The notes below the pieces were generated by a model, which worked only from the letters and a program-made list of their open reading frames with translations, did no database searches and was not told the origin of the DNA. This document shows, in pieces, positions 2,777 to 34,188 of a stretch of DNA of 38,527 nt. Position numbers and translations under genes: made by a program. This stretch comes from Octopus sinensis (Eukaryota). Each line of letters begins with the position of its first letter. Within the stretch, counting starts at the first letter, position 1. Where the stretch lies: contig NW_021833223.1 of assembly GCF_006345805.1 (NCBI RefSeq), forward strand, positions 1-38,527. Reading direction: 5' to 3'.

Positions 2777-3305
2777 CCTTCAGCCAGAGAAGTCACTTTA
2801 TTCGAAAATAACCTGTCGGCTTCATTCTGTGACCTTAAAACAATGCTGCATAATGCCATCTCCCTCTTAAGGTATATTCCTCATGCATATGTAAGTATGT
2901 ATGCGTGCAACTTTTTTGTGTGTGTTTGTGTCTGTGTGTGTGGAGACTAGGTTTTGTTAAGAATTATTAAACAAGGAACTGTCCATTCATACATATTGTA
3001 GTTTTGCATCTCTCAACTAAATGCTTTTATATAACTTATATCTACCTGTACATAACCTATGTGTCTGAATTCAATTCTAAAACAGTTGTGACGTCAAGGA
3101 ACAATAAATTGCCCGTTTTCTTTTAGTGTTTTTCTTGGAGCAACATATCTTGGCTTATCTTAGCAATAGTTAAACTGTTTTCCCCGACAGATTTTGATAT
3201 CTATAGGGAAACGCAACCTTTGTTTGTCTCTGGCATTGTTTAGTGAAGTCAATCTTTCTTCAAATTTCGTCTCACAACTACTCAGTTTAAAGTGGTTATA
3301 ATTTA

Positions 3306-3718
3306 GGCGCAGATGTGGCCGTGTACGGAAATAAAGTTTGCTTTCCAGTCACATGGTTCCGGGTTCAGACGCTCTGCGTAGCACCTTGGGCAAGTCTTCT
3401 ACTATAGCCTCGTGTTGACCAAAGCCTTATGAGTTGTATATACAAATGTATACTAGAATGCAGGACTTAGTGTCTCTTTTTGTACTCCACCACCGCTTGG
3501 CAATCGGACTGCAGCGTGTCCATCCCCGTAACTTAGCGGTTCAGCCTGAGAGACCGATAGAATAAGTACCAGGCTTTATATAAATGGGTACTTTGGTTGG
3601 TTCGTTCGACTGGAATTCTGTTCATTACATATGCGTTTGAATTCAATTCAAAATTCCTCGAGATGGTGCTCCAGCATGGTAGCAATACAATAAATGAAAC
3701 AAGTAAGAAATGAAAGAT
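3306..3718 (+). mobile_element. Diverged full-length tRNA-derived SINE (family A)
   Basis: GGCGCAGATGTGGCCGTG head, B-box-like GGTTCAG, CORE-like CCTTGGGCAAGTCTT, 3' GGTGCTCCAGCATGG...GAAACAAGTAAGA. Colinear with the reverse complement of 15695-16109. Confidence 0.85.
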
Positions 3719-3952
3719 AAGTTTCCATTGCCACAGCCCCCATCCCATAAATCTTTCTTATTTCTTAAAAGATAATTCGGTCATTATATCATTCCCTCAG
3801 TATGTTTCTCATTTAGCTTAATCCAGGGTTGTTAGATTAGCAACACTTATGTACCTAGTCATATATTCACAGAAATAGTTTTATTTGATGCGATCGATTT
3901 TCAATACAAAATTAGATTCAATACCAATGCAAAATTGCCAGAAACGCATTCG

Positions 3953-4409
3953 GAGAGTAGTCCAGAAGCTGGCTACCCGCATTGTTCATGGTCTCAAAAA
4001 TGTGTCCTATGAAGAAAGGCTGAGGACGCTCGACCTTTATTCTCTAGAAAAACACCGCCGCCGTGGTGATCTCATTCTCGCCCACAGCATCATAAGTGGA
4101 AAGTGTAACCTCTCGAAAGAGCTGTTCTTCACTCCTGCTCCAGGGCGTCGGCTGCGGGGTCATTCCGAAAAGCTCTACCTGCGACGATTTCATCTCAATC
4201 GAAGGAGAGGAGCTTTCTCCGTCCGGGTTGCGGATCCGTGGAATAAGCTGCCAGACGAGATGGTGAAGATGCCGACGACCGCTTTGTTCAAAGCCTCCCT
4301 TGACCTCAAGTGGCCTGAACTCTTTACATGAACACCACGCTGTACGTAACTCCATGTCCCCCTACATGGCTTTGCTATTTGCTTTTGAGCCAAATTAACT
4401 AACTAACTA
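3953..4409 (+). mobile_element. 5'-truncated CR1-clade LINE: ORF2 C-terminus, 3' UTR stem-loop and (AACT)n tail
   Basis: ORF 3885..4331 contains VQKLATRIVHGLKNVSYEERLRTLDLYSLEKHRRRGDLI, RLRGHSEKL and FSVRVADPWNKLP, typical of the CR1 ORF2 C-terminus. Hairpin CCATGT-CCCCCT-ACATGG at 4352-4369. Tail AACTAACTAACT. Confidence 0.92.
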
Positions 4410-4538: not shown

Positions 4539-4955
4539 AGGCGGCGCGGCGAGCTGGCAGAAACGTTAGCACGCCGGGCGAAATGCTTAGCGGTATTTCG
4601 TCTGCCGTTACGTTGTGAGTTCAAATTCCGCCGAGGTCGATTTTGCCTTTCATCCTTCCGGGGTCGATAAATTAAGTACCAGTTACGCACTGGGGTCGAT
4701 ATAATCGACTTAATCCGTATGTCTGTCCTTGTTTGTCTCCTCTGTGTTTAGCCCCTTGTGGGTAGTAAAGAAATAGGTATCCGTTTGTCTGTCCTTGTTT
4801 GTCTCCTCTGTGTTTAGCCCCTTGTGGGCAGTAAAGAAATTGGTATTTCGTCTGCCGCTACGTTCTGAGTTAAAATTTCGCCGAGGTCGACTTTGCTTTT
4901 CATCCTTTCAGGGTCGATTAAATAAATACCAGTTACGCACTGGGGTCGATATAAT
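4539..4955 (+). mobile_element. tRNA-derived SINE (family B) with internal tandem duplication
   Basis: A-box-like TGGCAGAAACG, B-box GAGTTCAAATTCC. 4715-4780 repeated at 4781-4846, then 4592-4705 repeated at 4842-4955. Confidence 0.85.
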
Positions 4956-5664: not shown

Positions 5665-5749
<85 letters not shown>

Positions 5750-5788
5750 TGTATGTATGTATGTATGTATGTATTTATGTATATATAT
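5664..5788. repeat. Compound (TA)n(TG)n(TATG)n microsatellite
   Basis: Direct reading. Confidence 0.97.
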
Positions 5789-5791
5789 GGT

Positions 5792-6046
5792 GGAGGCGCG
5801 TGGCCTAGTGTTTAGGGTGTCAGCATCATGATCATAAGATTGTGGTTTCCATTCCTGGACCAGGCGACGCGTTATGTTCTTGAGCAAAACACTTCATTTC
5901 ACGTTGCTCCAGTCCACTCATCCGGCAAAAATGAGTAACGCTTCAATGGACTGGGGTTCCGTCCATCTGGGGAACACATACACCATTGAAACCGGGAAAC
6001 CGAGCCCATGAGCCTAGTTAGGCTTTAAAAGGGTGCATTTATTTAT
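5792..6046 (+). mobile_element. tRNA-derived SINE (family C) with CORE-like segment
   Basis: GGAGGCGCGTGGCCTAGTG head and TTCTTGAGCAAAACACTTCATTTCACGTTGCTCCAG central segment shared with 17417-17738. Confidence 0.85.
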
Positions 6047-6066
6047 ATCATATATATTATATATAT

Positions 6067-6107
<41 letters not shown>
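6047..6107. repeat. (TA)n tract, left flank of the ribozyme array
   Basis: Direct reading. Last ATAT overlaps the unit consensus. Confidence 0.95.
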
Positions 6108-6109
<2 letters not shown>

Positions 6110-6226
6110 CGATTTAGGAGTGACCCTAACAGGTCACTCGTCCACCAGAAGAGCAGCCACAACTCACACCGCCAAGTAGTAAAATTCCAAATTAGGTGAA
6201 AATTTAAAAACATTTACCCTAATTCT

Positions 6227-6327
6227 TCTTTTAGACGTTGCAACGTTTCTGTGTCATTAATGATTAAATTAGCTTAATTAAATTAAATTAAGCCAATCTA
6301 CCATAGGTACACTTCATCAGTAAAAGA
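6227..6327 (-). ncRNA. Type I hammerhead ribozyme, unit 1 of the array
   Basis: Minus strand reads UCUUUUA-CUGAUGA-A-GUGU...ACAC-A-GAAA-CGUUGCAACGUC-UAAAAGA. Confidence 0.85.
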
Positions 6328-9300
6328 CCTGGGAGAGACAAATATACACGAGGCGTCTGTATAGATGCCTACGGGATATCTGACTTAAAATTTCAAGACT
6401 GACGTATTCGCGCCAAACTTATCAACAGTAAATATAAACTGCCGATTCAATCTCAGAATTATTCAGAAAATTATCAATTAGTCAATTTAGGGTAGCAAAA
6501 AATTCAATAGAAATTTATCGCAACCAGCGGCCTGGTGAAAAAACGATGGTGAAAAAGAGAAAATAGTCATCGACAATATATAAATATAACGATTAGGATT
6601 GACCCTAACAGGTCACTCGTTCCACCAGAAAGAGCGCAGCACAACTCACACCGCCAAGTAGTTAGTAATTCAGAAATTAGGTGAAAATTTAAAAACATTT
6701 ACCCTAATTCTTCTTTTAGACGTTGCAACGTTTCTGTGTCATTAATGATTAAATTAGCTTAATTAAATTAAATTAAGCCAATCTACCATAGGTTACACTT
6801 CATCAGTAAAAGACCTGGGAGAGACAAATATACACGAGGCGTCTGTATAGATGCCTACGGGATATCTGACTTAAAATTTTCAAGACTGATGACGTATTCG
6901 CGCCAAACTTATCAAAAAGTAAATATAAACTGCCGATTCAATATCTCAGAATTATTCAGAAAATTATCAATTAGTCAATTTAGGGTAGCAAAAAATTCAA
7001 TAGAAATTTTCGCAACCAGCGGCCTGGTGAAAAAAAAGAGAAAATAGTCATCGACTAAATATATAAATATAACGATTTAGGATTGACCCTAAAAGGTCAC
7101 TCGTCCACCAGAAAGAGCAGCCACAACTCACACCGCCAAGTATTAGTAATTCAGAAATTAGGTGAAAATTTAAAAACATTTACCCTAATTCTTCTTTTAG
7201 ACGTTGCAACGTTTCTGTGTCATTAATGATTAAATTAGCTTAATTAAATTAAATAAGCCAATCTACCATAGGTTACACTTCATAGTTAAAAGACCTGGGA
7301 GAGACAAAAATATACACGAGGCGTCTGTATAGATGCCTACGGGATATCTGACTTAAAATTTTCAAGACTGACGTATTCGCGCCAAACTTATCAACAGTGT
7401 AAATATAAACTGCCGATTCAATCTCAGAATTATTCAGAAAATTATCAATTAGTCAATTTAGGGTAGCAAAAAATTCAATAGAAATTTATCGCAACCAGCG
7501 GCTGGGCCTGGTTGAAAAAGAGAAAATAGTCATCGACCTAAATATATAAATATAACGATTTAGGAGTGACCCTAACAGGTCACTCGTCCACCAGAAAGAG
7601 CAGCCACAACTCACACCGCCAAGTATTAGTAATTCAGAAATTAGGTGAAAATTTAAAAACATTTACCCTAATTCTTCTTTTAGACGTTGCAACGTTTCTG
7701 TGTCATTCTGGTGTCATAATGATTAAATTAGCTTAATTAAATTACATTAAGCCAATCTACCATAGGTTACACTTCATCAGTAAAAGACCTGGGAGAGAGA
7801 GACAAATATACACGAGGCGTCTGTAGAGATGCCTACGGGATATCTGACTTAAAATTTTCAAGACTGACGTATTCGCGCCAAACTTATCAACAGTAAATAT
7901 AAACTGCCGATTCAATCTCAGAATTATTCAGAAAATTATCAATTAGTCAATTTAGGGTAGCAAAAAATTCAATAGAAATTTATCGCAACCAGCGCCCCCC
8001 TGGTGGTGAAAAAGAGAAAATAGTCATCGACTAAATATATAAATATAACGATTAGGAGTGACCCTAACAGGTCACTCGTCCACCAGAAAGAGCAGCCACA
8101 ACTCACACCGCCAAGTATAGTAATTCAGAAATTAGGTGAAAATTTAAAAACATTTACCCTAATTCTTCTTTTAGACGTTGCAACGTTTCTGTGTCATTAA
8201 TGATTAAATTAGCTTAATTAAATTAAATTAAGCCAATCTACCTAGGTTACACTTCATCAGTAAAAGACCTGGGAGGAGAGACAAATATACACGAGGCGTC
8301 TGTATAGATGCCTACGGGATATCTGACTTAAAATTTTCAAGACTGACGTATTCGCGCCAAACTTATCAACAGTAAATATAAACTGCCGATTCAATCTCAG
8401 AATATTCAGAAAATTATCAATTAGTCAATTTAGGGTAGCAAAAAATTCAATAGAATTTATCGCAACCAGCGGCCTGGTGAAAAAGAGAAAATAGTCATCG
8501 ACTAAATATATAAATATAACGATTTAGGAGTGACCCTAACAGGTCACTCGTTCCACCAGAAAGAGCAGCCACAACTCACACCGCCAAGTATTAGTAATTC
8601 AGAATTAGGTGAAAATTTAAAAACATTTACCCTAATTCTTCTTTGACGTTGACGTTGCAACGTTTCTGTGTCATTAATGATTAAATTAGCTTAATTAAAT
8701 TAAATTAAGCCAATTACCTAGGTTACACTCATCAGTAAAAGAACTGGGAGAGACAAATATACACGAGGCGTCTGTATAGATTGCCTACGGGATATCTGAC
8801 TTAAAATTTTCAAGACTGACGTATTCGCGCCAAACTTATCAACAGTAATATAAACTGCCGATTCAATCTCAGAATTATTCAGAAAATTATCAATTAGTCA
8901 ATTTAGGGTAGCAAAAAATTCAATAGAAATTATCGCAACCAGCGGCCTGGTAGAAAAAGAGAAAATAGTCATCGACTAAATATATAAATATAACGATTTA
9001 GGAGTGACCCTAACAGGTCACTCGTCCACCAGAAAGAGCAGCCACAACTCACACCGCCAAGTATTAGTAATTCAGAAATTAGGTGAAAATTTAAAAAACA
9101 TTTACCCTAATTCTTCTTTTAGACGTTGCAACGTTTCTGTGTCATTAATGATTAAATTAGCTTAATTAAATTAAATAAGCAAATCTACCATAGGTTACAC
9201 TTCATCAGTAAAAGGACCTGGGAGAGACAAATATACACGAGGCGTCTGTATATGTATGCCTACGGGATATATGACTTAAAATTTTCAAGACTGACGTTAT

Positions 9301-11007
9301 TCGCGCCAAACTTATCAACAGTAATATAAACTGCCGATTCAATCTCAGAATTAGTAGAGAAAATTACAATTAGTCAATTTAGGGTAGCAAAAAATTCAAT
9401 AGAAATTTATCGCAACCAGCGGCCTGGTGAAAAAGAGAAAATAGTCATCGACTAAATATATAAATATAACGATTTAGGAGTGACCCTAACAGGTCACTCG
9501 TCCACCAGAAAGAGCAGCAGCCAACACTCACACCGCAAAGTATTAGTAATTCAGAAATTAGGTGAAAATTAAAAACATTTACCCTAATTCTTCTTTTAGG
9601 ACGTTGCAACGTTTCTGTCATTAATGATTAAATTAGCTTAATTAAATTAAATTAAGCCAATCTACCATAGGTGACACTTCATCAGTAAAAGACCTGGGAG
9701 AGAGAGACAAATATAACGAGGCGTCTGTATAGATGCCTACGGGATATCTGACTTAAAATTTTCAAGACTGACGTTATTCGCGCCAAACTTATCAACAGTA
9801 AATATAAACTGCCGATTCAATCTCAGAATTATTCAGAAAATTATCAATAGTCAATTTAGGGTAGCAAAAAATTCAATAGAAATTATCGCAACCAGCGGCC
9901 CCTGGTGAAAAAGAGAAAATAGTCATCGACTAAATATATAATAAAACGATTTAGGAGTGACCCTAACAGGTCACTCGTCACCAGAAAGAGCACCCACAAC
10001 TCACACCGCCAAGTATTAGTAATTCAGAAAATTAGGTGAAAATTTAAAAACATTTACCCTAATTCTCTTTTAGACGTTGCAACGTTCTGTGTCATTAATG
10101 ATTAAATTAGCTTAATTAAATTAATTAAGCCAATTTACCATAGGTATACTTCATCAGTAAAAGACCTGGGAGAGACAAATATACACGAGGCGTCTGTATA
10201 GATGCCTACGGGATATCTGACTTAAAATTTTCAAGACTGACGTATTCGCGCCAAACTTATCAACAGTAAATATAAACTGCCGATTCAATCTCAGAATTAT
10301 TCAGAAAATTATCAATTAGTCAATTTAGGGTAGCAAAAAATTCAATAGAAATTTATCGCAACCAGCGGCCGGTGAAAAAGAGAAAATAGTCATCGACTAA
10401 ATATATAAATATAACGATTTAGGAGTGACCCTAACAGGTCACTCGTCACCAGAAGAGCAGCCACAACTCACACACCACACACGCCAAGTATTAGTAATTC
10501 AGAAATTAGGTGAAAATTTAAAAACATTTACCCTAATTCTTCTTTTAGACGTTGCACGTTTCTGTCATTAATGATTAAATTAGCTAATTAAATTAAATAA
10601 GCCAATCTACCATAGGTTACACTTCAATCCTAAAAGACCTGGGAGAGACAAATATACACGAGGCGTCTGTATAGATGCCTACGGGATATCTGACTTAAAA
10701 TTTTCAAGACTGACGTATTCGCGCCAAACTTATCAACAGTAAATATAAACTGCCGATCACATCTCAGATTATTCAGAAAATTATCAATTAGTCAATTTAG
10801 GGTAGCAAAAAATTCAATAGAAATTTATCGCAACCAGCGGCCTGGTGAAAAAGAGAAAATAGTCATCGACTAAATATATAAATATAACGATTTAGGAGTG
10901 ACCCTAACAGGTCACTCGTCCACCAGAAAGAGCAGCCACAACTCACACCGCCAAGTATTAGTAATTCAGAAATTAGGTGAAAATTTAAAAACATTTACCC
11001 TAATTCT

Positions 11008-11109
11008 TCTTTTAGACGTTGCAACGTTTCTGTGTCATTAATGATTAAATTAGCTTAATTAAATTAAATTAAGCCAATCTACCATAGGTTACACTTCATC
11101 AGTAAAAGA
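11008..11109 (-). ncRNA. Type I hammerhead ribozyme, unit 11 (consensus-like)
   Basis: Same motif. Stem I UCUUUUA/UAAAAGA, predicted cleavage between 11015 and 11014 on the minus strand (GUC|U). Confidence 0.87.
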
Positions 11110-11597
11110 CCTGGGAGAGACAAATATACACGAGGCGTCTGTATAGATGCCTACGGGATATCTGACTTAAAATTTAATTAAGCTAATTTAATCATTAATG
11201 ACACAGAAACGTTGCAACGTCTAAAAGAAGAATTAGGGTAAATGTTTTTAAATTTTCACCTAATTTCTGAATTACTAATACTTGGCGGTGTGAGGTTGTG
11301 GCTGCTCTTTCTGGTGGACGAGTGACCTGTTAGGGTCACTCCTAAATCGTTATATTTATATATTTAGTCGATGACTATTTTCTCTTTTTCACCAGGCCGC
11401 TTTGCGATAAATTTCTATTGAATTTTTTGCTACCCTAAATTGACTAATTGATAATTTTCTGAATATTCTGAGATTGAATCGGCAGTTTATATTTACTGTT
11501 GATAAGTTTGGCGCGAATACGTCAGTCTTGAAAATTTTAAGTCAGATATCCCGTAGGCATCTATACAGACGCCTCGTGTATATTTGTCTCTCCCAGG

Positions 11598-11697
11598 TCT
11601 TTTACTGATGAAGTGTAACCTATGGTAGATTGGCTTAATTTAATTTAATTAAGCTAATTTAATCATTAATGACAGAAACGTTGCAACGTCTAAAAGA
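11598..11697 (+). ncRNA. Type I hammerhead ribozyme, right arm copy 1 (2-nt deletion in stem II 3' strand)
   Basis: TCTTTTA-CTGATGA at 11598-11611, GACAGAAACGTTGCAACGTC-TAAAAGA at 11671-11697. Confidence 0.75.
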
Positions 11698-12064
11698 AGA
11701 ATTAGGGTAAATGTTTTTAAATTTTCACCTAATTTCTGAATTACTAATACTTGGCGGTGTGAGTTGTGGCTGCTCTTTCTGGTGGACGAGTGACCTGTTA
11801 GGGTCACTCCTAAATCGTTATATTTATATATTTAGTCGATGACTATTTTCTCTTTTTCACCAGGCCGCTGGTTGCGATAAATTTCTATTGATTTTTTGCT
11901 ACCCTAAATTGACTAATTGATATTTTCTGAATAATTCTGAGATTGAATCGGCAGTTTATATTTACTGTTGATAAGTTTGGCGCGAATACGTCAGTCTGAA
12001 AATTTTAAGTCAGATATCCCGTAGGCATCTATCAGACGCCTCGTGTATATTTGTCTCTCCCAGG

Positions 12065-12165
12065 TCTTTTACTGATGAAGTGTAACCTATGGTAGATTGG
12101 CTTAATTTAATTTAATTAAGCTAATTTAATCATAATGACACAGAAACGTTGCAACGTCTAAAAGA
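12065..12165 (+). ncRNA. Type I hammerhead ribozyme, right arm copy 2
   Basis: TCTTTTA 12065-12071, CTGATGA 12072-12078, GAAA 12143-12146, GTC 12156-12158, TAAAAGA 12159-12165. Confidence 0.87.
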
Positions 12166-12531
12166 AGAATTAGGGTAAATGTTTTTAAATTTTCACCTAA
12201 TTTCTGAATTACTAATACTTGGCGGTGTGATTTGTGGCTGCTCTTTCTGGTGGACGAGTGACCTGTTAGGGTCACTCCTAAATCGTTATATTTATATATT
12301 GTCGATGACTATTTTCTCTTTTTCACCAGGCCGCTGGTTGCGATAAATTTCTATTGAATTTTTTGCTACCCTAAATTGACTAATTGATAATTTTCTGAAT
12401 AATTCTGAGATTGAATCGGCAGGTTATATTTACTGTTGATAAGTTGGCGCGAATACGTCAGTCTGAAAATTTTAGTCAGATATCCCGTAGGCATCTATAC
12501 AGACGCCTCGTGTATATTTGTCTCTCCCAGC

Positions 12532-12631
12532 TCTTTTACTGATGAAGTGTAACCTATGGTAGATTGGCTTAATTAATTAATTAAGCTAATTTAATCATTA
12601 ATGACACAGAAACGTTGCAACGTCTAAAAGA
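12532..12631 (+). ncRNA. Type I hammerhead ribozyme, right arm copy 3
   Basis: TCTTTTA 12532-12538, CTGATGA 12539-12545, GTC 12622-12624, TAAAAGA 12625-12631. Confidence 0.87.
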
Positions 12632-12846
12632 AGAATTAGGGTAATGTTTTTAAATTTTCACCTAATTTCTGATTACTAATACTGGTTGGCGTGTGAGTTG
12701 TGGCTGCTCTTTCTGGTGGACGAGTGACCTGTTAGGGTCACTCCTAAATCGTTATATTTATATATTAGTCGATGACTATTTTCTCTTTTTCACCAGCCGC
12801 TGGTTGCGATAAATTTCTATTGAATTTTTTGCTACCCTAAATTGAC

Positions 12847-12848
<2 letters not shown>

Positions 12849-12899
<51 letters not shown>

Positions 12900-13790
12900 T
12901 GTATGTATGTATGTATATGCATGTATGTATACGTTTGTATGTGTGTGTGTGTATTATGAACAGCTCAAATCCAAAACGAAGTGAAAGCTTGAAATATCCA
13001 CGCTTCTTTTTACAGTACATTTACGAAAACTACTTCCATATAAATATACATACACGTGTGTGCGTACGTATTTGTTGCGTATAGAAACACATATATATAA
13101 TATATGTATATTCGTATTTATATCAAACATGCATGTATATACGTATGAATGTAATGTATTTATGTATGTATATGACGTCCATACACATTCTCAAACAAAC
13201 TTATAAATTCTTTTACATTTATATATTCCGATTCCAATTTATCTTACTTTCGAAAAAGTTTCACAATAGCTGTCGCTATGAAAGTATGTGTGTGTGAGTG
13301 AGTGGTTGTGTGTGTGTTTGTATTTATATAAATATATACACTACATACATTCATATGTATATATACATATGTCTGTATTTATGTATGTATGTATGTATGT
13401 ATGTATGTATGTATGTATATATATATACCATACATATATATGCACAGATATACATATGTACATATATATAAACATATACATATATATATGAACAATGTTT
13501 ATCACCTATGTATATAGGATGTAAATAATGTACATTTACACATACACACATATAGACACACAGCACACACACAAATATACGCATACACACACATGTATAC
13601 ACACATATTTACAAATATTAATATATATATATATAAACGTACATATATACATATGTTTAACTCCTAAGTATACAGAATGTAAATAATCTATATTTACACA
13701 CATACGCACGCATATATTCATATATATATATATATATGAAGAGAGTGAGAGAGAGAGATATATGATATATAGGGAGAGAGTGAGACAGAC
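12849..13790. repeat. Microsatellite-rich tract: (AT)n, (TATG)n, (TG)n, (CA)n, (GA)n
   Basis: Direct reading, with short unique spacers. The first (AT)n is the right flank of the array. Confidence 0.9.
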
Positions 13791-15694: not shown

Positions 15695-16109
15695 TACTCT
15701 TACTCTTTTACTCTTTTACTTGTTTCAGTCATTTGACTGCGGCCATGCTGGAGCACCGCCTTTAATCGAGCAACTCGACCCCGGGACTTATTCTTTTGTA
15801 AGCCCAGTACTTATTCTATCAGTCTCTTTTGCCGAACCGCTAAGTAACGGGGACATAAACACACCAGCATCGGTTGTCAAGCAATGCTAGGGGACAAACA
15901 CAGACACACAAACACACACACGCATATATATATATATACATATATACGACGGGCTTCTTTCAGTTTCCGTCTACCAAATCCACTCACAAGGCTTTGGTCG
16001 GCCAGAGGCTATAGTAGAAGACACTTGCCCAAGATGCCACGCAGTGGGACTGAACCCGGAACCATGTGGTTGGTAGACAAGCTACTTACCACACAGCCAC
16101 TCCTGCGCC
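15695..16109 (-). mobile_element. Full-length tRNA-derived SINE (family A)
   Basis: Minus strand: GGCGCAGGAGTGGCTGTGTGGT (A box), GGTTCAGTCC (B box), CTTGGGCAAGTGTCTT (CORE-like), internal TA/TG tract, (AAGAGTA)n tail. Confidence 0.93.
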
Positions 16110-16831
16110 TATATCAATTTATTTTGAATAACGCAACCTAAAACACTATCAATATCAACATTTGTCTCCATACCTATTATATTCCTTATATTTAATTTAC
16201 GTTTAGCTTAGTTTTTGTCCGTTTTGACTTGACTTTCTCAAATTTATTTTAAGGTAAATAATTTCTCGTTATTTCCTCTGGCTCTGCGAAGCGTATTTAC
16301 CAATCGTGTCACTCAACCTAAAATTCAATTACTCTTTGTCATCTTTTGTCTTAAATATATTTATATCTTACATTTTAATTCCACTTAGCGACCTTGTCTT
16401 TCTGTTCCTTCTGGCGGCTCTAGAATGTTTGTTTACACCTTGACTTACCCTTCCCATTATTTTATTTTACTTCATCAACCATTCTGTAAACTATAATCAT
16501 TTTCACCTGCCAGGATTAACGCTTACGCTTCCGCTAGTATTCAAGTATAATCTCTTAACGGAAGTTTCCAAATGTTTCACGTATTTTAAGGAATATTTTC
16601 AAATACTTTCATATACAGCAGTTTTACCTACAAGTTGTTCCCCTTTGTGATTCAATTGATAGCTGTATACACTTTAATGTTGCTTAGCGATTTTTTTTTA
16701 ATCATTAAATATGCATTCACCTCATCAAATGAACAACTGTAGTTTGTTCTAACATACATTGAAATAATTAACTCATGTTTTCCCTATACATACATACACC
16801 ATGCATACATACATACAAACATGTAAATGCA

Positions 16832-17989: not shown

Positions 17990-18768
17990 GTGTGTGGCCG
18001 AGTGTGTGTGCGTTTGTGAGTGTGTGTGTATGTGTGTGTGAGTGTGTGTGCGTTTGTGAGTGTGTGTGTGCGTTTCTGAGTGTGTGTGTGTGTGTGAGTG
18101 TGTGTGCGTTTGTGAGTGAGTGTGTGTGTGTGTGTGAGTGTGTGTGCGTTTGTGTGTGTGTGTGTGAGTGTGTGTGAGTGTGTGAGTGTGTGTGCGTTTG
18201 TGTGTGTGTGTGAGTGTGCGTGCGTTTGTGAGTGTATGTGCGTTTGTGAGTGTGTGTGTGTGTGTGAGTGTGTGTGCGTTTGTGTGTGTGTGTGAGTGTG
18301 CGTGCGTTTGTGAGTGTATGTGTGTGTGAGTGTGTGTGTGTGTGTGAGTGTGTGTGCGTTTGTGTGTGTGGTGAGTGTATGTGCGTTGTGAGTGTGTTGT
18401 GTGTGTGAGTGTGTGTGCGTTTGTGGTGTGTGTGGGAGTGTGCGTGCGTGTTGTGAGTGTATGTGTGTGTGAGTGTGTGTGTGTGTGTGAGTGTGTGTGC
18501 GTTTGTGTGTGTGTGTGAGTGTGTGTGCGTTTGTGAGTGTGTGTGTGTGAGTGTGTGTGCGTTTGTGAGTGTGTGTGTGAGTGTGTGTGCGTTTGTGTGT
18601 GTGTGTGAGTGTGTGTGCGTTTGTGAGTGTGTGTGTGTGAGTGTGTGTGCGTTTGTGAGTGTGTGTGTGTGAGTGTGTGTGCGTTTGTGAGTGTGTGTGT
18701 GTGAGTGTATGTGCGTTTGTGAGTGTGTGTGTGTGAGTGTGTGTGCGTTTGTGTGTGTGTGTGTGTGC
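17990..18768. repeat. Complex (TG)n-derived minisatellite (units such as GTGAGTGTGTGTGCGTTT)
   Basis: Direct reading. Source of the 287-aa HT-repeat ORF. Confidence 0.95.
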
Positions 18769-19715: not shown

Positions 19716-19734
19716 ATATATATATATATATATA

Positions 19735-20150
19735 TACTCTTTTACTCTTTTACTTGTTTCAGTCATTTGACTGCGGCCATGCTGGAGCACCGCCTTTAGT
19801 CGAGCAAATCGACCCCGGGACTTATTCTTTGTAAGCCCAGTACTTATTACATCGGTCTCTTTCGCCGAACCGCTAAGTGACGGGGACGTAAACACACCAG
19901 CATCGGTTGTCAAGCAATGCTAGGGGGTCAAACACACACACACACACACACACAAACACACACGCATACACATATATACACATATATACATATATACGAC
20001 AGGCTTCTTTCAGTTTCCGTCTACCAAATCCACTCACAAGGAATTGGTCGGCCCGAGGCTATAGCAGAAGACACTTGCCCAAGATGCCACGCAGTGGGAC
20101 TGAACGCAGAACCATGTGGTTGGTTAGCAAGCTACTTACCACACAGCCAC
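19735..20150 (-). mobile_element. Full-length tRNA-derived SINE (family A)
   Basis: Colinear and highly similar to 15695-16109. Confidence 0.93.
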
Positions 20151-21275
20151 TTTATTTAAAAGGAGCAGAAATTCAACAAAACCTGTTACTCGGAGTTTCA
20201 TGTTCCCATTCGTCGGACAGTTTTTTCTAAAAATAGAACCGATATGCCAATTCTATCAAGACTAGTATAAAAGTTACACCTTTAAAAATAAGATTAAATT
20301 AAGATAAAATTTTAAAAGCAGAATAATAAATGAAAGGGAAATTGGGAAAAACCTCTAAAAATGCCGAGATGAACGTTAAAAAAAGATAGAAAAAACGTTT
20401 ATGTATTTCGAGCGCAAAACCCCATCTTTTGAAGTGTACATTCAAAGCTATGTCTGTTTACGTAGATCGGCCGTGACCCCGTTCTAATCCGGTGAATGTA
20501 CTAGTAGCAGCGGCTTGCAAATAATGGTACTGTTGATGCCAAACAAATAAATGTATAAACAACATAAAAAATAGGTAAATAACTATGTTACTTTCTCCAT
20601 TTTACACTCCTTCGCTCCAATAGTATTCTCTCTCTAAAAGTCTTATAGAAAATTCGCTAAATTTCTTGCAGCTTTTCTTGTATCTACACACTTAAAACAT
20701 ATGTCAACATAATAATTTGGATTTCTTTTAACACGCTAACGGCGTATCACATTTACTTGACTTTTAAATAGTAAATATTATTTTCCAATTCCTTCTTTCT
20801 TTTGTTACTTCACAATATCTATTCCATATGAAAGCCATTCCTTCATTTATTTCATCAGCTGCATTAATATGCCTATGTGTAATTAACATCCATTCTATCG
20901 TTGTCTGTTCTACTTTTTATTTGCCAAACATGAAATGAAATTAGCATATAATGAGCTACCTTTCTGGTTTAATATTCATAATTTTCCCTGCCAGCTAGAT
21001 GTAAGACCTACATCATTATTATATGATATATACATACCACACACACACACACACAACATATATATATAATATATTATATATATAATATATACACATATAT
21101 ACATACACATAATTTTTATATATATATATATATACATACATATATAATAATAAATATAGGGAAGAAATCCAAACTTACAGGGAAAATCAGATTTAGGATT
21201 GAATCCAATTTTATAGTAAAATATTATATTATATTAAATTAGAGACAATTTAATATAATATATATGTATATATAT

Positions 21276-24913: not shown

Positions 24914-25157
24914 ATGTGTGTGTGTGTGTGTGTCTGTGTGTGTGTGTGTGTATTTGTGTGTGTGTGTTTGCCCCACTCCTCTCCATCGCTTGACACTGAT
25001 GTTGGTGTGACTTTCATTTCCATAATCTGGTGGTTCGACAAAAGAGAAGATAGAATAACTAATAGGGTTACAAAAATAAGTTCTGGTATCGATTTGTTCG
25101 ATTCGAGGTATTGCTCCAACATGGCCGCAATCAAATGACTGAAACAAGAACAAAAGA
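24914..25157 (+). mobile_element. 3' half of family A SINE starting at its (TG)n tract
   Basis: CATCGCTTGACACTGATGTTGGTGTG...TGCTCCAACATGGCCGCAATCAAATGACTGAAACAAG. Confidence 0.82.
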
Positions 25158-25177
25158 ATTTTTGAAATGTATATGCA

Positions 25178-25589
25178 TATTCTTATATTCTTTTATTTGT
25201 TCCAATCAGTTGACAGGCTACCATACAGGAGCACTGCCTCTGGTTGAACAAATCGACCCCAGGGCTTATTCTTTGTAACCCTAGTATTTAATCTATTGGC
25301 ATGCTTTGTCGAACTGCTATATTACAGAGATATACATACACCAACATCGGTTGTCAAGCGATGGTGGGCCACAGATACATGAAGGTAAATATATATATAT
25401 ATATATTTCTTTATTTCTTTATTTCTACGACGGGCTTCTTCCAGTTTCCCTCTACTAAATTCACTCACAAGGTTTTGGTCGGTCCGAGACTAGAATAGAA
25501 GACACTTGCTCAAGGTGCCACGCAGTGGTACTGAACCCGGAACCATGTTGTTGGGAAGCAAGCTACTTACCACACAGCCATGTCTGCGC
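25178..25589 (-). mobile_element. Diverged full-length family A SINE
   Basis: Colinear with 15695-16109. Ends AAGCTACTTACCACACAGCCATGTCTGCGC. Confidence 0.88.
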
Positions 25590-26790: not shown

Positions 26791-26830
26791 CTCCAGCATG
26801 GCCGTGGGCTAATGACTGAAACAAGTAAAA
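26791..26830 (+). mobile_element. Family A SINE 3' tail fragment
   Basis: CTCCAGCATGGCCGTGGGCTAATGACTGAAACAAGTAAAA. Confidence 0.7.
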
Positions 26831-26835
26831 CCGCC

Positions 26836-27021
26836 GCTCACCCTCCCTACAGTCCAGACCTTAATGGCTGTGACATTTGCTTGCTGTCGAAGCTGGAGAA
26901 GATGAAGGCGAATGTGATAGGGTTTCTGGACACCTTCCGTTTGGAGGACATCTATCGGACCTTCAGGACATGACGGGAACGCTGCAACTATTTCATTGAA
27001 GTGAGAGGATCTTATTTGAAA
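26836..27021 (+). mobile_element. Mariner (DD34D) transposase C-terminal pseudogene fragment
   Basis: Translates AHPPYSPDLNGCDICLLSKLEKMKANVIGFLDTFRLEDIYRTFRT*RERCNYFIEVRGSYLK. YSPDL..CD is the mariner third-aspartate motif. Internal deletion and stop. Confidence 0.88.
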
Positions 27022-33478: not shown

Positions 33479-33739
33479 AAATTAAAATGAAAGTGAGTGT
33501 GAAAATTGGATATTAATTTGATAACATCGTTTTAACACCAGTGGTTAATAGTGAAACATTTTTTGTGATTAATCTATATTTTTGCTACTTTTCATTTGCC
33601 TTGCTAGCTTACGTTTCTGGTGTTTGCTAAATTTTCTAGAGAACATTTCTAAGTGGTAAGACCATAGCGGATCTACTAGAGTTCTCCACATATTTGCCAT
33701 CCCTCTCATATATATGTAATATATATATATATATGTATA

Positions 33740-34140
33740 TACTCTTTTACTCTTTTACTTGTTTCAGTCATTTGGCTGCGGCCATACTGGGGCACCGCCT
33801 TTAGTCGATCAAATCGACCCCGGGACTTATTCTTTGTAAGCCCAGTACTTATTCTATCTGTCTCTTTTGCTGAACCGATAAGTGACGGGGACGTAAACAC
33901 ACCAGCATCGGTTGTCAAGCAATGCTAGGGGGGGGGCAAACACAGACACACAAACACACTCACATACATATCTATATACGATAGGCTTCTTTCAGTTTCC
34001 GTCTACCAAATCCACTCACAAGGCATTGGTCGGCCCGGGGCTATAGCAGAAGACACTTGCCCAAGATGCCACGCAGTGGGACTGAACCCGCAACCATGTG
34101 GTTTGTTAGCAAGCTACTTACCACACAGCCACTCCTGCCC
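33740..34140 (-). mobile_element. Full-length tRNA-derived SINE (family A)
   Basis: Colinear and highly similar to 15695-16109 and 19735-20150. Confidence 0.93.
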
Positions 34141-34141
34141 T

Positions 34142-34188
34142 TATATACCAAGCCCAACCGTGTTTATCTGCAACACTACGTATCTGTA

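What the first reader, a model, noticed from the sequence alone, without database searches (positions are those of the whole stretch)
6104..12850. 6.7-kb tandem array of a 473-nt hammerhead-ribozyme unit: candidate retrozyme / circular-RNA system
Seen: ~14 near-identical non-coding units, each with UCUUUUA-CUGAUGA...GAAACGUUGCAACGUC|UAAAAGA, a type I HHR with a GUC site. There are 14 complete motifs, and by eye 8 retain core and stems (units 1, 2, 4, 5, 7, 11 and right-arm copies 2 and 3). No ORF of 60 aa or more lies in the unit. Established: tandem HHR repeats that self-process into monomers occur in newt satellite 2, Schistosoma Sm-alpha, Dolichopoda cricket satellites and metazoan non-LTR retrozymes, which form small circular RNAs. 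Inference: a sense transcript would be cut every ~473 nt into monomers starting UAAAAGAAG and ending GCAACGUC, which could circularise into viroid-sized RNAs mobilised in trans by a Penelope RT. I know of no description of this unit in cephalopods but cannot search.
Basis: partly seen in the sequence, partly recalled or inferred. Interest (0 to 1): 0.93.

Follow-up and report, generated by a model that had tools for sequence, protein, structure and literature searches.

The report
Octopus hammerhead-ribozyme tandem repeat (retrozyme)
This is a 6.7-kb block of about 14 copies of a 473-base non-coding unit from an octopus genome; each unit carries a self-cleaving hammerhead-ribozyme motif, which makes it a new but fairly ordinary member of the known animal "retrozyme" class, not a new kind of system.

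Summary
Window 6096-12850 holds a 473-nt non-coding unit (34% G+C). About 10.6 copies lie on the minus strand (6096-11175) and 3.6 on the plus strand (11171-12850), joined head to head.

Each unit carries a type I hammerhead motif with every conserved core base and a GUC cleavage site. Helix I has 7 bp. Helix III has 4 bp inside a 12-nt palindrome. A looser version hit 6 of 40,000 shuffled strands.

The motif is atypical. Helix II is 65 nt long, and A/A flanks its G-C base. No Rfam hammerhead model reports it, even at E<=10.

Both outer ends abut (TA)n. The 5'-truncated ends meet at an asymmetric centre with about 5 nt of microhomology. This matches published Penelope-like-element (PLE) insertion architecture.

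The host is Octopus. No second locus, transcript or reverse-transcriptase (RT) gene could be found with these tools.

Best reading: a non-autonomous metazoan non-LTR retrozyme. Cleavage, circularisation and mobilisation are inferred, not shown. Novelty: new member of a known kind. Interest about 0.4, not 0.93.

The parts
6040..6108 (.). Left flank: (TA)n microsatellite directly abutting the array
   Evidence: TRF row 6040-6108; pure (TA) runs at 6058-6077 and 6078-6108; sequence.
6096..11175 (-). Left arm, HHR sense on the minus strand. It comprises consensus 313-473 (5'-truncated unit at the centre), then 10 full units, then consensus 1-144 at the outer 3' end.
   Evidence: TRF period 473, 10.6 copies; unit boundaries; blastn of the consensus against the window.
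11171..11175 (.). Head-to-head junction of the two 5'-truncated arms, with about 5 nt (AATTT) shared by both. The centre is asymmetric: 105 nt lie between the perfectly complementary arms.
   Evidence: The two TRF arrays overlap at 11171-11175; sequence; inverted repeat 10942-11065 / 11171-11294, 100% complementary with a 105-nt spacer.
11171..12850 (+). Right arm, HHR sense on the plus strand. It comprises consensus ~423-473 (5'-truncated), then 3 full units, then consensus 1-228 at the outer 3' end.
   Evidence: TRF period 468, 3.6 copies.
12849..12950 (.). Right flank: (TA)n at 12849-12872, then (TATG)n, directly abutting the array
11008..11109 (-). Intact type I HHR, identical to the consensus; cleavage after C17 at 11015
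9115..9216 (-). HHR that passes the descriptor (one extra C in helix I, leaving 6 bp); C17 at 9122
8167..8267 (-). Intact HHR (1-nt deletion in the distal helix II); C17 at 8174
7676..7787 (-). HHR with intact core and stems and a 10-nt duplication in the helix II internal loop; C17 at 7683
6712..6813 (-). Intact HHR, identical to the consensus; C17 at 6719
6227..6327 (-). Intact HHR (1-nt deletion in the helix II internal loop); C17 at 6234
12065..12165 (+). Intact HHR; C17 at 12158
12532..12631 (+). Intact HHR; C17 at 12624
7193..10642 (-). Span holding the five left-arm HHR copies that are damaged as assembled. C17 at 10548: CUGAUGA lost and helix III short by one base. 10073: GAAA reads GAA. 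9600: 2-nt deletion at the helix II base and an extra C at the cleavage site. 8651: A9 deleted and helix I disrupted. 7200: G5 deleted. The span also contains intact copies listed separately.
   Evidence: Most of these lesions are 1-2-nt indels that may be assembly errors.
11597..11697 (+). Right-arm HHR with a 2-nt (AC) deletion at the base of helix II; C17 at 11690
11171..11228 (+). 5'-truncated HHR at the junction: only the distal helix II, GAAA, helix III and the GUC site remain, with no CUGAUGA; C17 at 11221

Best explanation
The array is a genomic copy of a non-autonomous, hammerhead-bearing retroelement of the metazoan non-LTR retrozyme type, in an Octopus genome.

Proposed working, step by step:
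1. Sense transcripts run outward from the centre on each arm, or enter by read-through. (Inferred.)
2. Each 473-nt unit folds a type I hammerhead and cuts after GUC. This gives monomers that begin UAAAAGAAG and end GCAACGUC. The hairpin form of helix III is weak and lies in a 12-nt palindrome, so cutting is probably most efficient as a double hammerhead between neighbouring units of a multimer. (Motif shown; catalysis inferred.)
3. The 5'-OH and 2',3'-cyclic-phosphate ends are joined by the host RtcB-type tRNA ligase into a highly paired circle of about 473 nt. (Inferred from mussel and axolotl retrozymes.)
4. A Penelope-like-element reverse transcriptase/endonuclease (RT/EN) supplied in trans nicks AT-rich DNA and copies the circular or multimeric RNA round and round, producing tandem cDNA.
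5. At this locus both strands of a (TA)n microsatellite appear to have primed synthesis. That would give two arms with their 3' ends outward and their 5'-truncated ends joined in the middle through about 5 nt of microhomology. (Architecture shown; enzyme and template form inferred.)
For: Motif.
- All conserved core positions are present: C3 U4 G5 A6 G8 A9, G12 A13 A14, the A15.1-U16.1 pair and C17.
- Helix I has 7 bp and helix III has 4 bp with a UGCA loop.
- The motif lies on one polarity only.
- Chance rate is at most 1.5e-4 per strand even for a looser descriptor.
- The hammerhead-compatible fold is -27.7 kcal/mol, against an MFE of -29.9.
- Helix III scores -1.6 kcal/mol as a hairpin but -19.3 as a 12-bp duplex. 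This is the arrangement described for dimer-acting animal and PLE hammerheads (PMC4209133).

Class features.
- 473-nt head-to-tail units and 34% G+C.
- No ORF above 55 aa.
- The circular sense monomer folds at -120 kcal/mol, 62% paired, z = -4.9. The antisense gives -89.8.
- These match the definition in PMC7229834.

PLE-type insertion.
- Both ends directly abut pure (TA)n, which covers only 5.5% of the rest of the window.
- The arms are inverted with 5'-truncated inner ends at consensus 313 and ~423 and outer ends at 144 and 228.
- PMC8557442 describes partial tandems, an adjacent inverted 5'-truncated copy and a microsatellite bias for PLEs.
- PMC11167929 shows that a PLE protein cuts and extends both DNA strands, prefers AT-rich DNA and starts inside the RNA.
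- The two 3' ends lie at different unit positions, and neither is at the cleavage site. This fits a circular or multimeric template better than a linear monomer.

Link to PLE hammerheads. An extra nucleotide after A9, a long helix II and a palindromic helix III are listed as PLE-HHR traits (PMC4209133).

Youth. The units share one master sequence. R1, R2 and the 161-nt inner unit have no substitutions, and 150 variant columns are private against 26 shared.
Against: - No Rfam hammerhead model reports the motif, even at E<=10 on a perfect copy.
- An A faces an A between the core and the G-C pair of helix II. Read as 10.1/11.1, this breaks the usually conserved G10.1-C11.1 position next to the core.
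- The 65-nt helix II rules out the classical loop 1-loop 2 contact unless its 5x5 internal loop substitutes for loop 2.
- Six of 14 copies are damaged as assembled.
- Only one locus was seen. No copy lies elsewhere in the window or in 20 kb of O. vulgaris.
- There was no match in the metagenome, viral or protein collections. Dispersal and expression are therefore unshown.
- No RT/EN domain was found in the 77 longest non-repetitive reading frames outside the array.
- A target-site duplication cannot be read inside a microsatellite.
- The head-to-head layout could be a later inversion or an assembly error.
Confidence: 0.65

Rival explanations
1. It is an ordinary satellite that grew in place by unequal crossing-over or replication slippage and later suffered an inversion. 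The hammerhead is an inherited relic that no longer does anything.
For: Only one locus was seen. Six of 14 motifs are damaged as assembled. Rfam models do not recognise the motif. The helix II base is non-canonical. Microsatellites are very common in this window.
Against: In-place growth predicts variants shared by neighbouring units, yet 150 variant columns are private against 26 shared. Both ends lie exactly at (TA)n, and both inner ends are 5'-truncated in opposite orientation. That is the published PLE insertion signature (PMC8557442, PMC11167929). The sense strand folds far better than shuffles or the antisense. The core is perfect in the consensus.
Confidence: 0.15
2. The unit is the pseudo-LTR (pLTR) region of an autonomous octopus Penelope-like element that was copied without its ORF. 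On this reading it is a pLTR-only derivative of a known PLE family and not an independent retrozyme family.
For: In Xenopus, 24 of 57 retrozyme families match PLE termini, and the trees place retrozymes beside pLTRs (bioRxiv 10.64898/2026.07.22.740005). The HHR shares PLE-HHR traits (PMC4209133). The insertion architecture is PLE-like.
Against: No RT/EN sequence lies in the array or window. No octopus PLE sequence was available for comparison. This rival overlaps the best explanation: it changes the name and lowers the novelty, not the mechanism.
Confidence: 0.3
3. The inverted right arm, or part of the copy number, is an artefact of long-read assembly (a chimeric or fold-back read, or a collapsed or expanded repeat).
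For: The differences between units look technical. Indels outnumber substitutions (149 against 77). Transitions to transversions are 23:54. Of 57 deleted bases, 42 sit in homopolymers.
Against: A fold-back chimera gives a symmetric palindrome. Here the centre is asymmetric: a 105-nt spacer, with cleavage sites 160 nt left and 50 nt right of the junction. Both arms end in (TA)n and then pass into different unique flanks.
Confidence: 0.12
4. The hammerhead-like string is a chance resemblance in an AT-rich repeat.
For: No Rfam hit. The unconstrained MFE fold is not the hammerhead fold.
Against: A looser descriptor hit 6 of 40,000 shuffled strand instances. There were no hits in the other 32 kb of the window. 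The motif sits in exactly the genomic context where type I hammerheads are known (PMC7229834).
Confidence: 0.02

Closest known systems
Metazoan non-LTR retrozymes (coral Acropora millepora, mussel Mytilus galloprovincialis, axolotl; Cervera & de la Pena 2020, PMC7229834)
   Same: Type I HHR in one polarity; head-to-tail repeats of a few hundred bp, from dimers to large multimers; low G+C; no ORF, LTR, PBS or PPT; a highly self-paired monomer; co-existence with PLEs proposed as the mobilising partner.
   Different: The unit (473 nt) is at or just above the 150-450 bp range given for invertebrates. Helix II is 65 nt instead of about 4 bp plus a loop. An A/A flanks the helix II base pair. The motif escapes the Rfam models. 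The host is a cephalopod, for which I found no retrozyme description. No expression or cleavage data exist.
Hammerheads of Penelope-like elements (Cervera & de la Pena 2014, PMC4209133) and PLE insertion structure (PMC8557442, PMC11167929)
   Same: Extra nucleotide between A9 and G10.1; longer helix II; palindromic helix III suited to dimeric action; tandem plus inverted 5'-truncated copies; AT-rich or microsatellite targets; priming on both DNA strands.
   Different: There is no RT/EN ORF in the array or window. Helix I (7 bp) and helix III (4 bp) are longer than in the 'minimal' PLE motifs. There is an additional A on the 3' side, before G12.
Newt satellite 2, Schistosoma Sm-alpha and Dolichopoda cave-cricket pDo500 hammerhead satellites
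   Same: Tandem satellite-like repeats transcribed into multimers that self-cleave to monomers; type I topology; weak palindromic helix III favouring double-hammerhead cleavage (my knowledge and PMC7229834, PMC4209133).
   Different: There is no sequence similarity, and helix II here is far longer. Those satellites are high-copy and experimentally active, whereas here only one 14-copy locus is known.
Axolotl HHR_Amex2 (PMC7229834)
   Same: A mismatch at the base of helix II (U.U there, A.A here) in a retrozyme hammerhead. The Amex2 monomer still self-cleaves (22% in 1 h), and cleavage is much better as a dimer.
   Different: Different mismatch, different helix II length, no data for this RNA.
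Plant LTR retrozymes (PMC4918200)
   Same: Non-autonomous retroelement whose hammerheads release a circular RNA intermediate.
   Different: Plant elements have type III hammerheads in two LTRs, a PBS and PPT, more than 55% G+C and Gypsy-type mobilisation. None of these is present here.

Membership tests
Hammerhead ribozyme, type I | Conserved core CUGANGA ... GAAA, the A15.1-U16.1 pair and a non-G at position 17 | tested here: met
   CUGAUGA, GAAA, A15.1-U16.1 and a GUC site are in the consensus and in 8 of 14 copies.
Hammerhead ribozyme, type I | Three helices around the core, with helix I open (5' and 3' ends in helix I) | tested here: met
   Helix I 7 bp (UCUUUUA/UAAAAGA). Helix II GUGU/ACAC plus a 19-bp distal stem. 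Helix III ACGU/ACGU with a UGCA loop. The constrained fold is -27.7 kcal/mol against an MFE of -29.9.
Hammerhead ribozyme, type I | G10.1-C11.1 pair directly adjoining A9 and G12 | tested here: inconclusive
   A G-C pair is present, but it is separated from A9 and from G12 by one A on each side. An extra base after A9 is known in PLE and some viroid hammerheads (PMC4209133). I know of no precedent for the extra A before G12.
Hammerhead ribozyme, type I | Recognised by the curated covariance models (Rfam Hammerhead_1, _3, _II, HH9, HH10) | tested here: not met
   No hammerhead hit at gathering threshold or at E<=10, including on a perfect copy. The probable cause is the 65-nt helix II plus the A/A, but this could not be verified.
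Hammerhead ribozyme, type I | Site-specific self-cleavage in Mg2+ | not testable with these tools
   Needs in-vitro transcription of a monomer and a dimer.
Hammerhead ribozyme, type I | Covariation in the helices across related sequences | not testable with these tools
   No relatives could be retrieved. Variation within the array is mostly noise.
Metazoan non-LTR retrozyme | Type I HHR inside head-to-tail tandem repeats of roughly 150-450 bp (families up to 972 bp in vertebrates) | tested here: met
   473-nt unit in 10.6 + 3.6 copies; size ranges from PMC7229834 and bioRxiv 10.64898/2026.07.22.740005.
Metazoan non-LTR retrozyme | Low G+C (<45-50%) and no ORF, LTR, PBS or PPT | tested here: met
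   34.5% G+C. Longest frame 55 aa. No terminal repeats other than the units themselves. PBS and PPT were not searched for separately.
Metazoan non-LTR retrozyme | Monomer RNA highly self-paired | tested here: met
   Circular sense fold -120 kcal/mol, 62% paired, z = -4.9 against 100 dinucleotide shuffles; antisense -89.8.
Metazoan non-LTR retrozyme | Expressed as linear and circular monomer RNAs | not testable with these tools
   No octopus transcriptome was searchable. Translated unit frames found nothing in the protein collection.
Metazoan non-LTR retrozyme | Many dispersed loci in the genome (evidence of mobility) | not testable with these tools
   Only this locus was seen. None lies in the rest of the window or in 20 kb of O. 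vulgaris chromosome OX597823.1. No eukaryotic genome search is available.
Metazoan non-LTR retrozyme | Co-occurrence with Penelope-like elements in the host genome | not tested
   Literature only. Naiad PLE lineages, described there as long-inactivated remnants, are reported in Octopus spp. (PMC8557442), and Penelope elements in the giant squid (PMC6962438). None is in this window.
Autonomous Penelope-like element | ORF encoding a telomerase-like RT with a GIY-YIG endonuclease between pLTRs | tested here: not met
   No ORF above 55 aa in the unit. No Pfam family in the 77 longest non-repetitive frames of the window.
Plant LTR retrozyme | Type III HHRs in two LTRs, with a PBS, a PPT and >55% G+C | tested here: not met
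   Type I topology, multicopy tandem array and 34% G+C.

The most novel reading that the evidence does not exclude
The locus may be the footprint of a single insertion event. In that event a Penelope-type enzyme nicked both strands of a (TA)n tract and reverse-transcribed a circular 473-nt hammerhead RNA by rolling circle from both nicks, and the two cDNA arms were then joined by microhomology. If so, it is direct genomic evidence for the still hypothetical circle-to-tandem-array step of animal retrozyme mobilisation.

It would also show that a hammerhead with a 65-nt helix II and an A/A next to the core is functional. Cephalopod, and probably other, retrozymes would then be systematically missed by Rfam-based annotation.

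A further untested corollary: a read-through transcript of the two arms would form about 1.7 kb of near-perfect double-stranded RNA. That could feed small-RNA silencing or the very active ADAR editing of octopus.
Probability: 0.3. Interest if true: 0.6.

Novelty: new member of a known kind. Interest (0 to 1): 0.4.

Why it matters
It would add cephalopods to the animals known to carry hammerhead retrozymes. The one cephalopod record I found is a bare count of 235 Rfam Hammerhead_1 hits in the giant squid (PMC6962438).

It gives a concrete example of a natural hammerhead that the standard covariance models miss, so surveys based on them probably under-count such elements.

The locus is also unusually legible. 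It has near-identical units, both ends in a (TA)n tract, and inverted arms with different start and stop points in the unit. It could therefore serve as a test case for the proposal that Penelope-like enzymes copy circular ribozyme RNAs into tandem arrays. None of this changes the existing picture of retrozymes; it extends it.

Tried and rejected
- Rfam 15 on the whole window at gathering threshold, on 5900-13100 at E<=10, and on two single hammerhead copies (one perfect) at E<=10. No hammerhead or other ribozyme family was reported. The mir-297, mir-3688 and similar hits are the (TATG)n microsatellite at 12850-12960.
- Pattern scans for the hammerhead (CTGATGA-N50-78-GAAACGTTGCAACGTC) in JGI metagenome contigs and IMG/VR, and for a 26-mer of the unit hairpin in metagenome contigs. 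Zero matches.
- The eight longest reading frames of the unit, concatenated and searched against the 5.8-billion-protein collection in the hope of reaching Logan or RNA-seq contigs. No hit.
- Exact look-up of the LINE-tail ORF in two start variants to find the source contig. Not on record.
- The O. vulgaris locus of the closest LINE-tail protein (L001, 20.5 kb) as a possible orthologous empty site. It shares only dispersed repeats and contains no unit.
- ARAGORN on the window. No tRNA, including in the SINE-like element next to the array.
- Pfam on the longest frames, then on 77 frames packed into 10 pseudo-proteins. Nothing significant, so there is no RT or endonuclease nearby.
- I did not build a generic hammerhead covariance model from remembered sequences, because I could not vouch for the letters.
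- I considered and rejected a simple fold-back assembly artefact, because the centre is asymmetric, and a chance motif, because of the shuffle result.

Full report
WHAT IS THERE

Tandem Repeats Finder reports two adjoining arrays. One spans 6096-11175 (period 473, 10.6 copies, 93% matches, 5% indels). The other spans 11171-12850 (period 468, 3.6 copies, 97% matches). GC and AT skew change sign at about 11.1 kb. The sequence shows the right arm is the reverse complement of the left. The feature is therefore a head-to-head pair of tandem arrays of one unit.

I cut the arms at the predicted cleavage sites and aligned the 13 full units. The consensus is 473 nt and 34.5% G+C. Units are about 95-99% identical to it. 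The longest stop-to-stop frame through tandem copies is 55 aa. No other copy or fragment of the unit lies elsewhere in the window.

THE HAMMERHEAD MOTIF

In the sense orientation (minus strand on the left arm, plus strand on the right) each unit reads:
...CCCAGG-UCUUUUA-CUGAUGA-A-GUGU-[57 nt]-ACAC-A-GAAA-CGU-UGCA-ACGU-C|UAAAAGA-AGAAUUAGGG.

- All conserved core positions are present: C3 U4 G5 A6 (U7) G8 A9, G12 A13 A14, the A15.1-U16.1 pair and C17. The cleavage triplet is the canonical GUC.
- Helix I is 7 bp, followed by an internal loop and a CCC/GGG extension.
- Helix III is 4 bp with a UGCA loop and lies inside a perfect 12-nt palindrome (ACGUUGCAACGU).
- Helix II is unusual. It has a 4-bp base (GUGU/ACAC), then a 5x5 internal loop, a 19-bp distal stem and a 6-nt loop, 65 nt in all.

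I wrote a type I descriptor requiring the core, GAAA, a U-H site, and helices of at least 5, 3 and 3 bp. It passes 8 copies and hits nothing else on either strand of the 38.5-kb window or on the antisense of the unit. A looser descriptor (helices of at least 4, 2 and 2 bp) occurs in 6 of 40,000 dinucleotide-shuffled strand instances of the unit. The motif is therefore not a chance string.

The hammerhead-compatible fold is only 2.2 kcal/mol above the unconstrained optimum, -27.7 against -29.9. As a hairpin, helix III is worth -1.6 kcal/mol. As a 12-bp duplex between two copies it is worth -19.3. This is the arrangement that lets newt, viroid and Penelope hammerheads act as dimers in multimeric transcripts (PMC4209133).

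WHAT SPEAKS AGAINST THE RIBOZYME CALL

Rfam 15 reports no hammerhead family at gathering threshold or at E<=10. This holds even when only a 136-nt stretch around a consensus-identical copy is searched. I attribute this to two features, but could not verify the attribution:
- the 65-nt helix II;
- an A on each side between the core and the G-C pair of helix II.

An extra base between A9 and G10.1 is a recurrent trait of Penelope-element hammerheads and some canonical ones (PMC4209133). A U.U mismatch at the base of helix II exists in the axolotl retrozyme hammerhead HHR_Amex2, which still cleaves: 22% in 1 h as a monomer and much better as a dimer (PMC7229834). I know of no precedent for the extra A before G12.

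The long helix II also excludes the classical loop 1-loop 2 contact unless its internal loop takes that role. I therefore expect activity, probably modest as a monomer and better as a dimer. This is inference.

THE VARIATION BETWEEN UNITS LOOKS LARGELY TECHNICAL

- Across 13 units there are 77 substitutions, 92 inserted bases and 57 deleted bases.
- Transitions to transversions are 23:54.
- Of the 57 deleted bases, 42 sit next to an identical base.
- 150 variant columns are private to one unit, against 26 shared.

This is the profile of long-read consensus errors, or of a low-fidelity polymerase, and not of slow mutational decay. It has two consequences:
- The six 'damaged' hammerheads mostly carry 1-2-nt indels in the core or the helix II base. 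They may be intact in the real genome.
- The units derive from one master sequence, because three of them carry no substitutions at all. The array is therefore young or was made in one event. In-place growth by unequal crossing-over would instead leave variants shared by neighbouring units.

THE ARCHITECTURE OF THE LOCUS

In consensus coordinates:
- The left arm runs 313->473, then ten full units, then 1->144.
- The right arm runs ~423->473, then three full units, then 1->228.

Both arms have their 3' ends (ribozyme sense) pointing outward and their 5'-truncated ends meeting at 11171-11175. About 5 nt (AATTT) there can belong to either arm.

The centre is not a symmetric palindrome. 105 nt separate the perfectly complementary arms. 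Cleavage sites lie 160 nt left and 50 nt right of the junction. This argues against a simple fold-back read artefact.

Both outer ends abut pure (TA)n directly, at 6058-6108 and 12849-12872. Such runs cover only 5.5% of the rest of the window. The left end falls inside the unit's own UUAUAUUUAUAUAU stretch, so it merges with the microsatellite.

These features match published Penelope-like-element insertions:
- partial tandems, an adjacent inverted 5'-truncated copy, and a bias for microsatellites (PMC8557442);
- a purified PLE protein that cuts and extends both DNA strands, prefers AT-rich DNA and initiates inside the RNA rather than at its 3' end (PMC11167929).

The two 3' ends lie at different unit positions, and neither is at the GUC site. 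This is what a circular or multimeric template predicts, and not what a linear monomer predicts.

THE RNA AS A WHOLE

Folded as a circle, the sense monomer gives -120 kcal/mol with 62% of bases paired. That is 4.9 standard deviations below 100 dinucleotide shuffles. The antisense gives -89.8. Published animal retrozyme RNAs are described as small, highly self-paired circles (PMC7229834).

HOST AND SURROUNDINGS

A LINE 3'-tail frame at 3885-4331 is 91% identical in protein, and 96% in DNA over 451 nt, to a hypothetical protein on Octopus vulgaris chromosome OX597823.1. SINE-like repeats in the window match that locus at about 88-92%. The window therefore comes from O. vulgaris or a close relative. 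The O. vulgaris locus itself is not orthologous and has no unit.

The window is microsatellite-rich repeat DNA with no recognisable protein domain. In particular, no reverse transcriptase or GIY-YIG endonuclease was found. Any mobilising enzyme must act in trans.

COMPARISON WITH WHAT IS KNOWN

Type I hammerheads inside 150-450-bp, low-G+C, ORF-less tandem repeats are the defining picture of metazoan non-LTR retrozymes. They are reported as 'widely but patchily' present in animal phyla, including molluscs (mussel). There is experimental self-cleavage, RtcB-mediated circularisation and abundant circular RNA (PMC7229834). A 2026 preprint derives vertebrate retrozymes from Penelope pLTRs (bioRxiv 10.64898/2026.07.22.740005).

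In the searchable literature I found no retrozyme description for cephalopods. The only cephalopod record is a count of 235 Rfam Hammerhead_1 hits in the giant squid genome (PMC6962438).

The present element meets every sequence-level criterion of the class (see the membership table). It differs in its very long helix II, the A/A next to the core, its invisibility to Rfam, and its size at the top of the invertebrate range. I file it as a new member of a known kind.

VERDICT

The Penelope connection gains indirect support from the insertion architecture. Catalysis, circular RNA, dispersal and the mobilising enzyme are all still inferred. No relatives could be retrieved for a covariation test. 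Interest is moderate at about 0.4. It is a useful, clean example, and a warning about model-based hammerhead annotation, but not a surprise to specialists.

Noticed in passing
window 5665-6108: Directly left of the array lie a compound microsatellite, (AT)n(GT)n(TATG)n at 5665-5786, then a roughly 250-bp tRNA-SINE-like element (about 5790-6040, beginning GGTGGAGGCGCGTGGCCTAGTG), then (TA)n. The right flank of the array continues with (TA)n(TATG)n. This looks like one microsatellite that received nested insertions (a SINE, then the array). ARAGORN finds no tRNA there.
   Followed up: partly
window 3885-4409: The 3' tail of a LINE-type retrotransposon ORF (motif ...YEERLRTLDLYSLEKHRRRGDLI...). 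It is 96% identical in DNA to a copy on Octopus vulgaris chromosome OX597823.1. This is what identifies the host. Pfam does not recognise it.
   Followed up: yes
window 15701-16119, 19716-20151, 25157-25580, 33729-34144 (also 1-38, 3304-3577): A dispersed repeat family of about 400 bp. It is present at least four times in the window and several times in the O. vulgaris locus L001, at 75-92% identity. Three copies share the frame ASFSFRLPNPLTR.WSARGYSRRHLPKMPRSGTE. It is probably a cephalopod SINE.
   Followed up: partly
window 18000-18767: A GT-rich minisatellite (18- and 32-nt periods, about 24-43 copies) with extreme GC skew of +0.68. It produces a spurious 287-aa His/Thr-rich ORF on the minus strand.
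   Followed up: no
window 26791-26970: A reading frame containing HPPYSPDL, which from my own knowledge resembles the C-terminal signature of Tc1/mariner transposases. It is probably a decayed DNA-transposon remnant. Pfam gave no hit.
   Followed up: partly
window 6096-12850: The differences between repeat units are dominated by 1-nt indels in homopolymers, with a transition:transversion ratio of 23:54. This suggests the assembly is poorly polished inside this repeat. Base-level statements about single copies should be treated with care.
   Followed up: yes
window 12843-13053 and 6061-6177: Sub-threshold Rfam hits (mir-297 at E = 2e-4, mir-3688, mir-466, a pestivirus 3'UTR model) all fall on (TATG)n or (TA)n microsatellites and are low-complexity artefacts.
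   Followed up: yes
window 4713-4846: A 66-bp unit repeated twice at 95% identity, just downstream of the LINE tail. L001 has weak matches to the same region.
   Followed up: no
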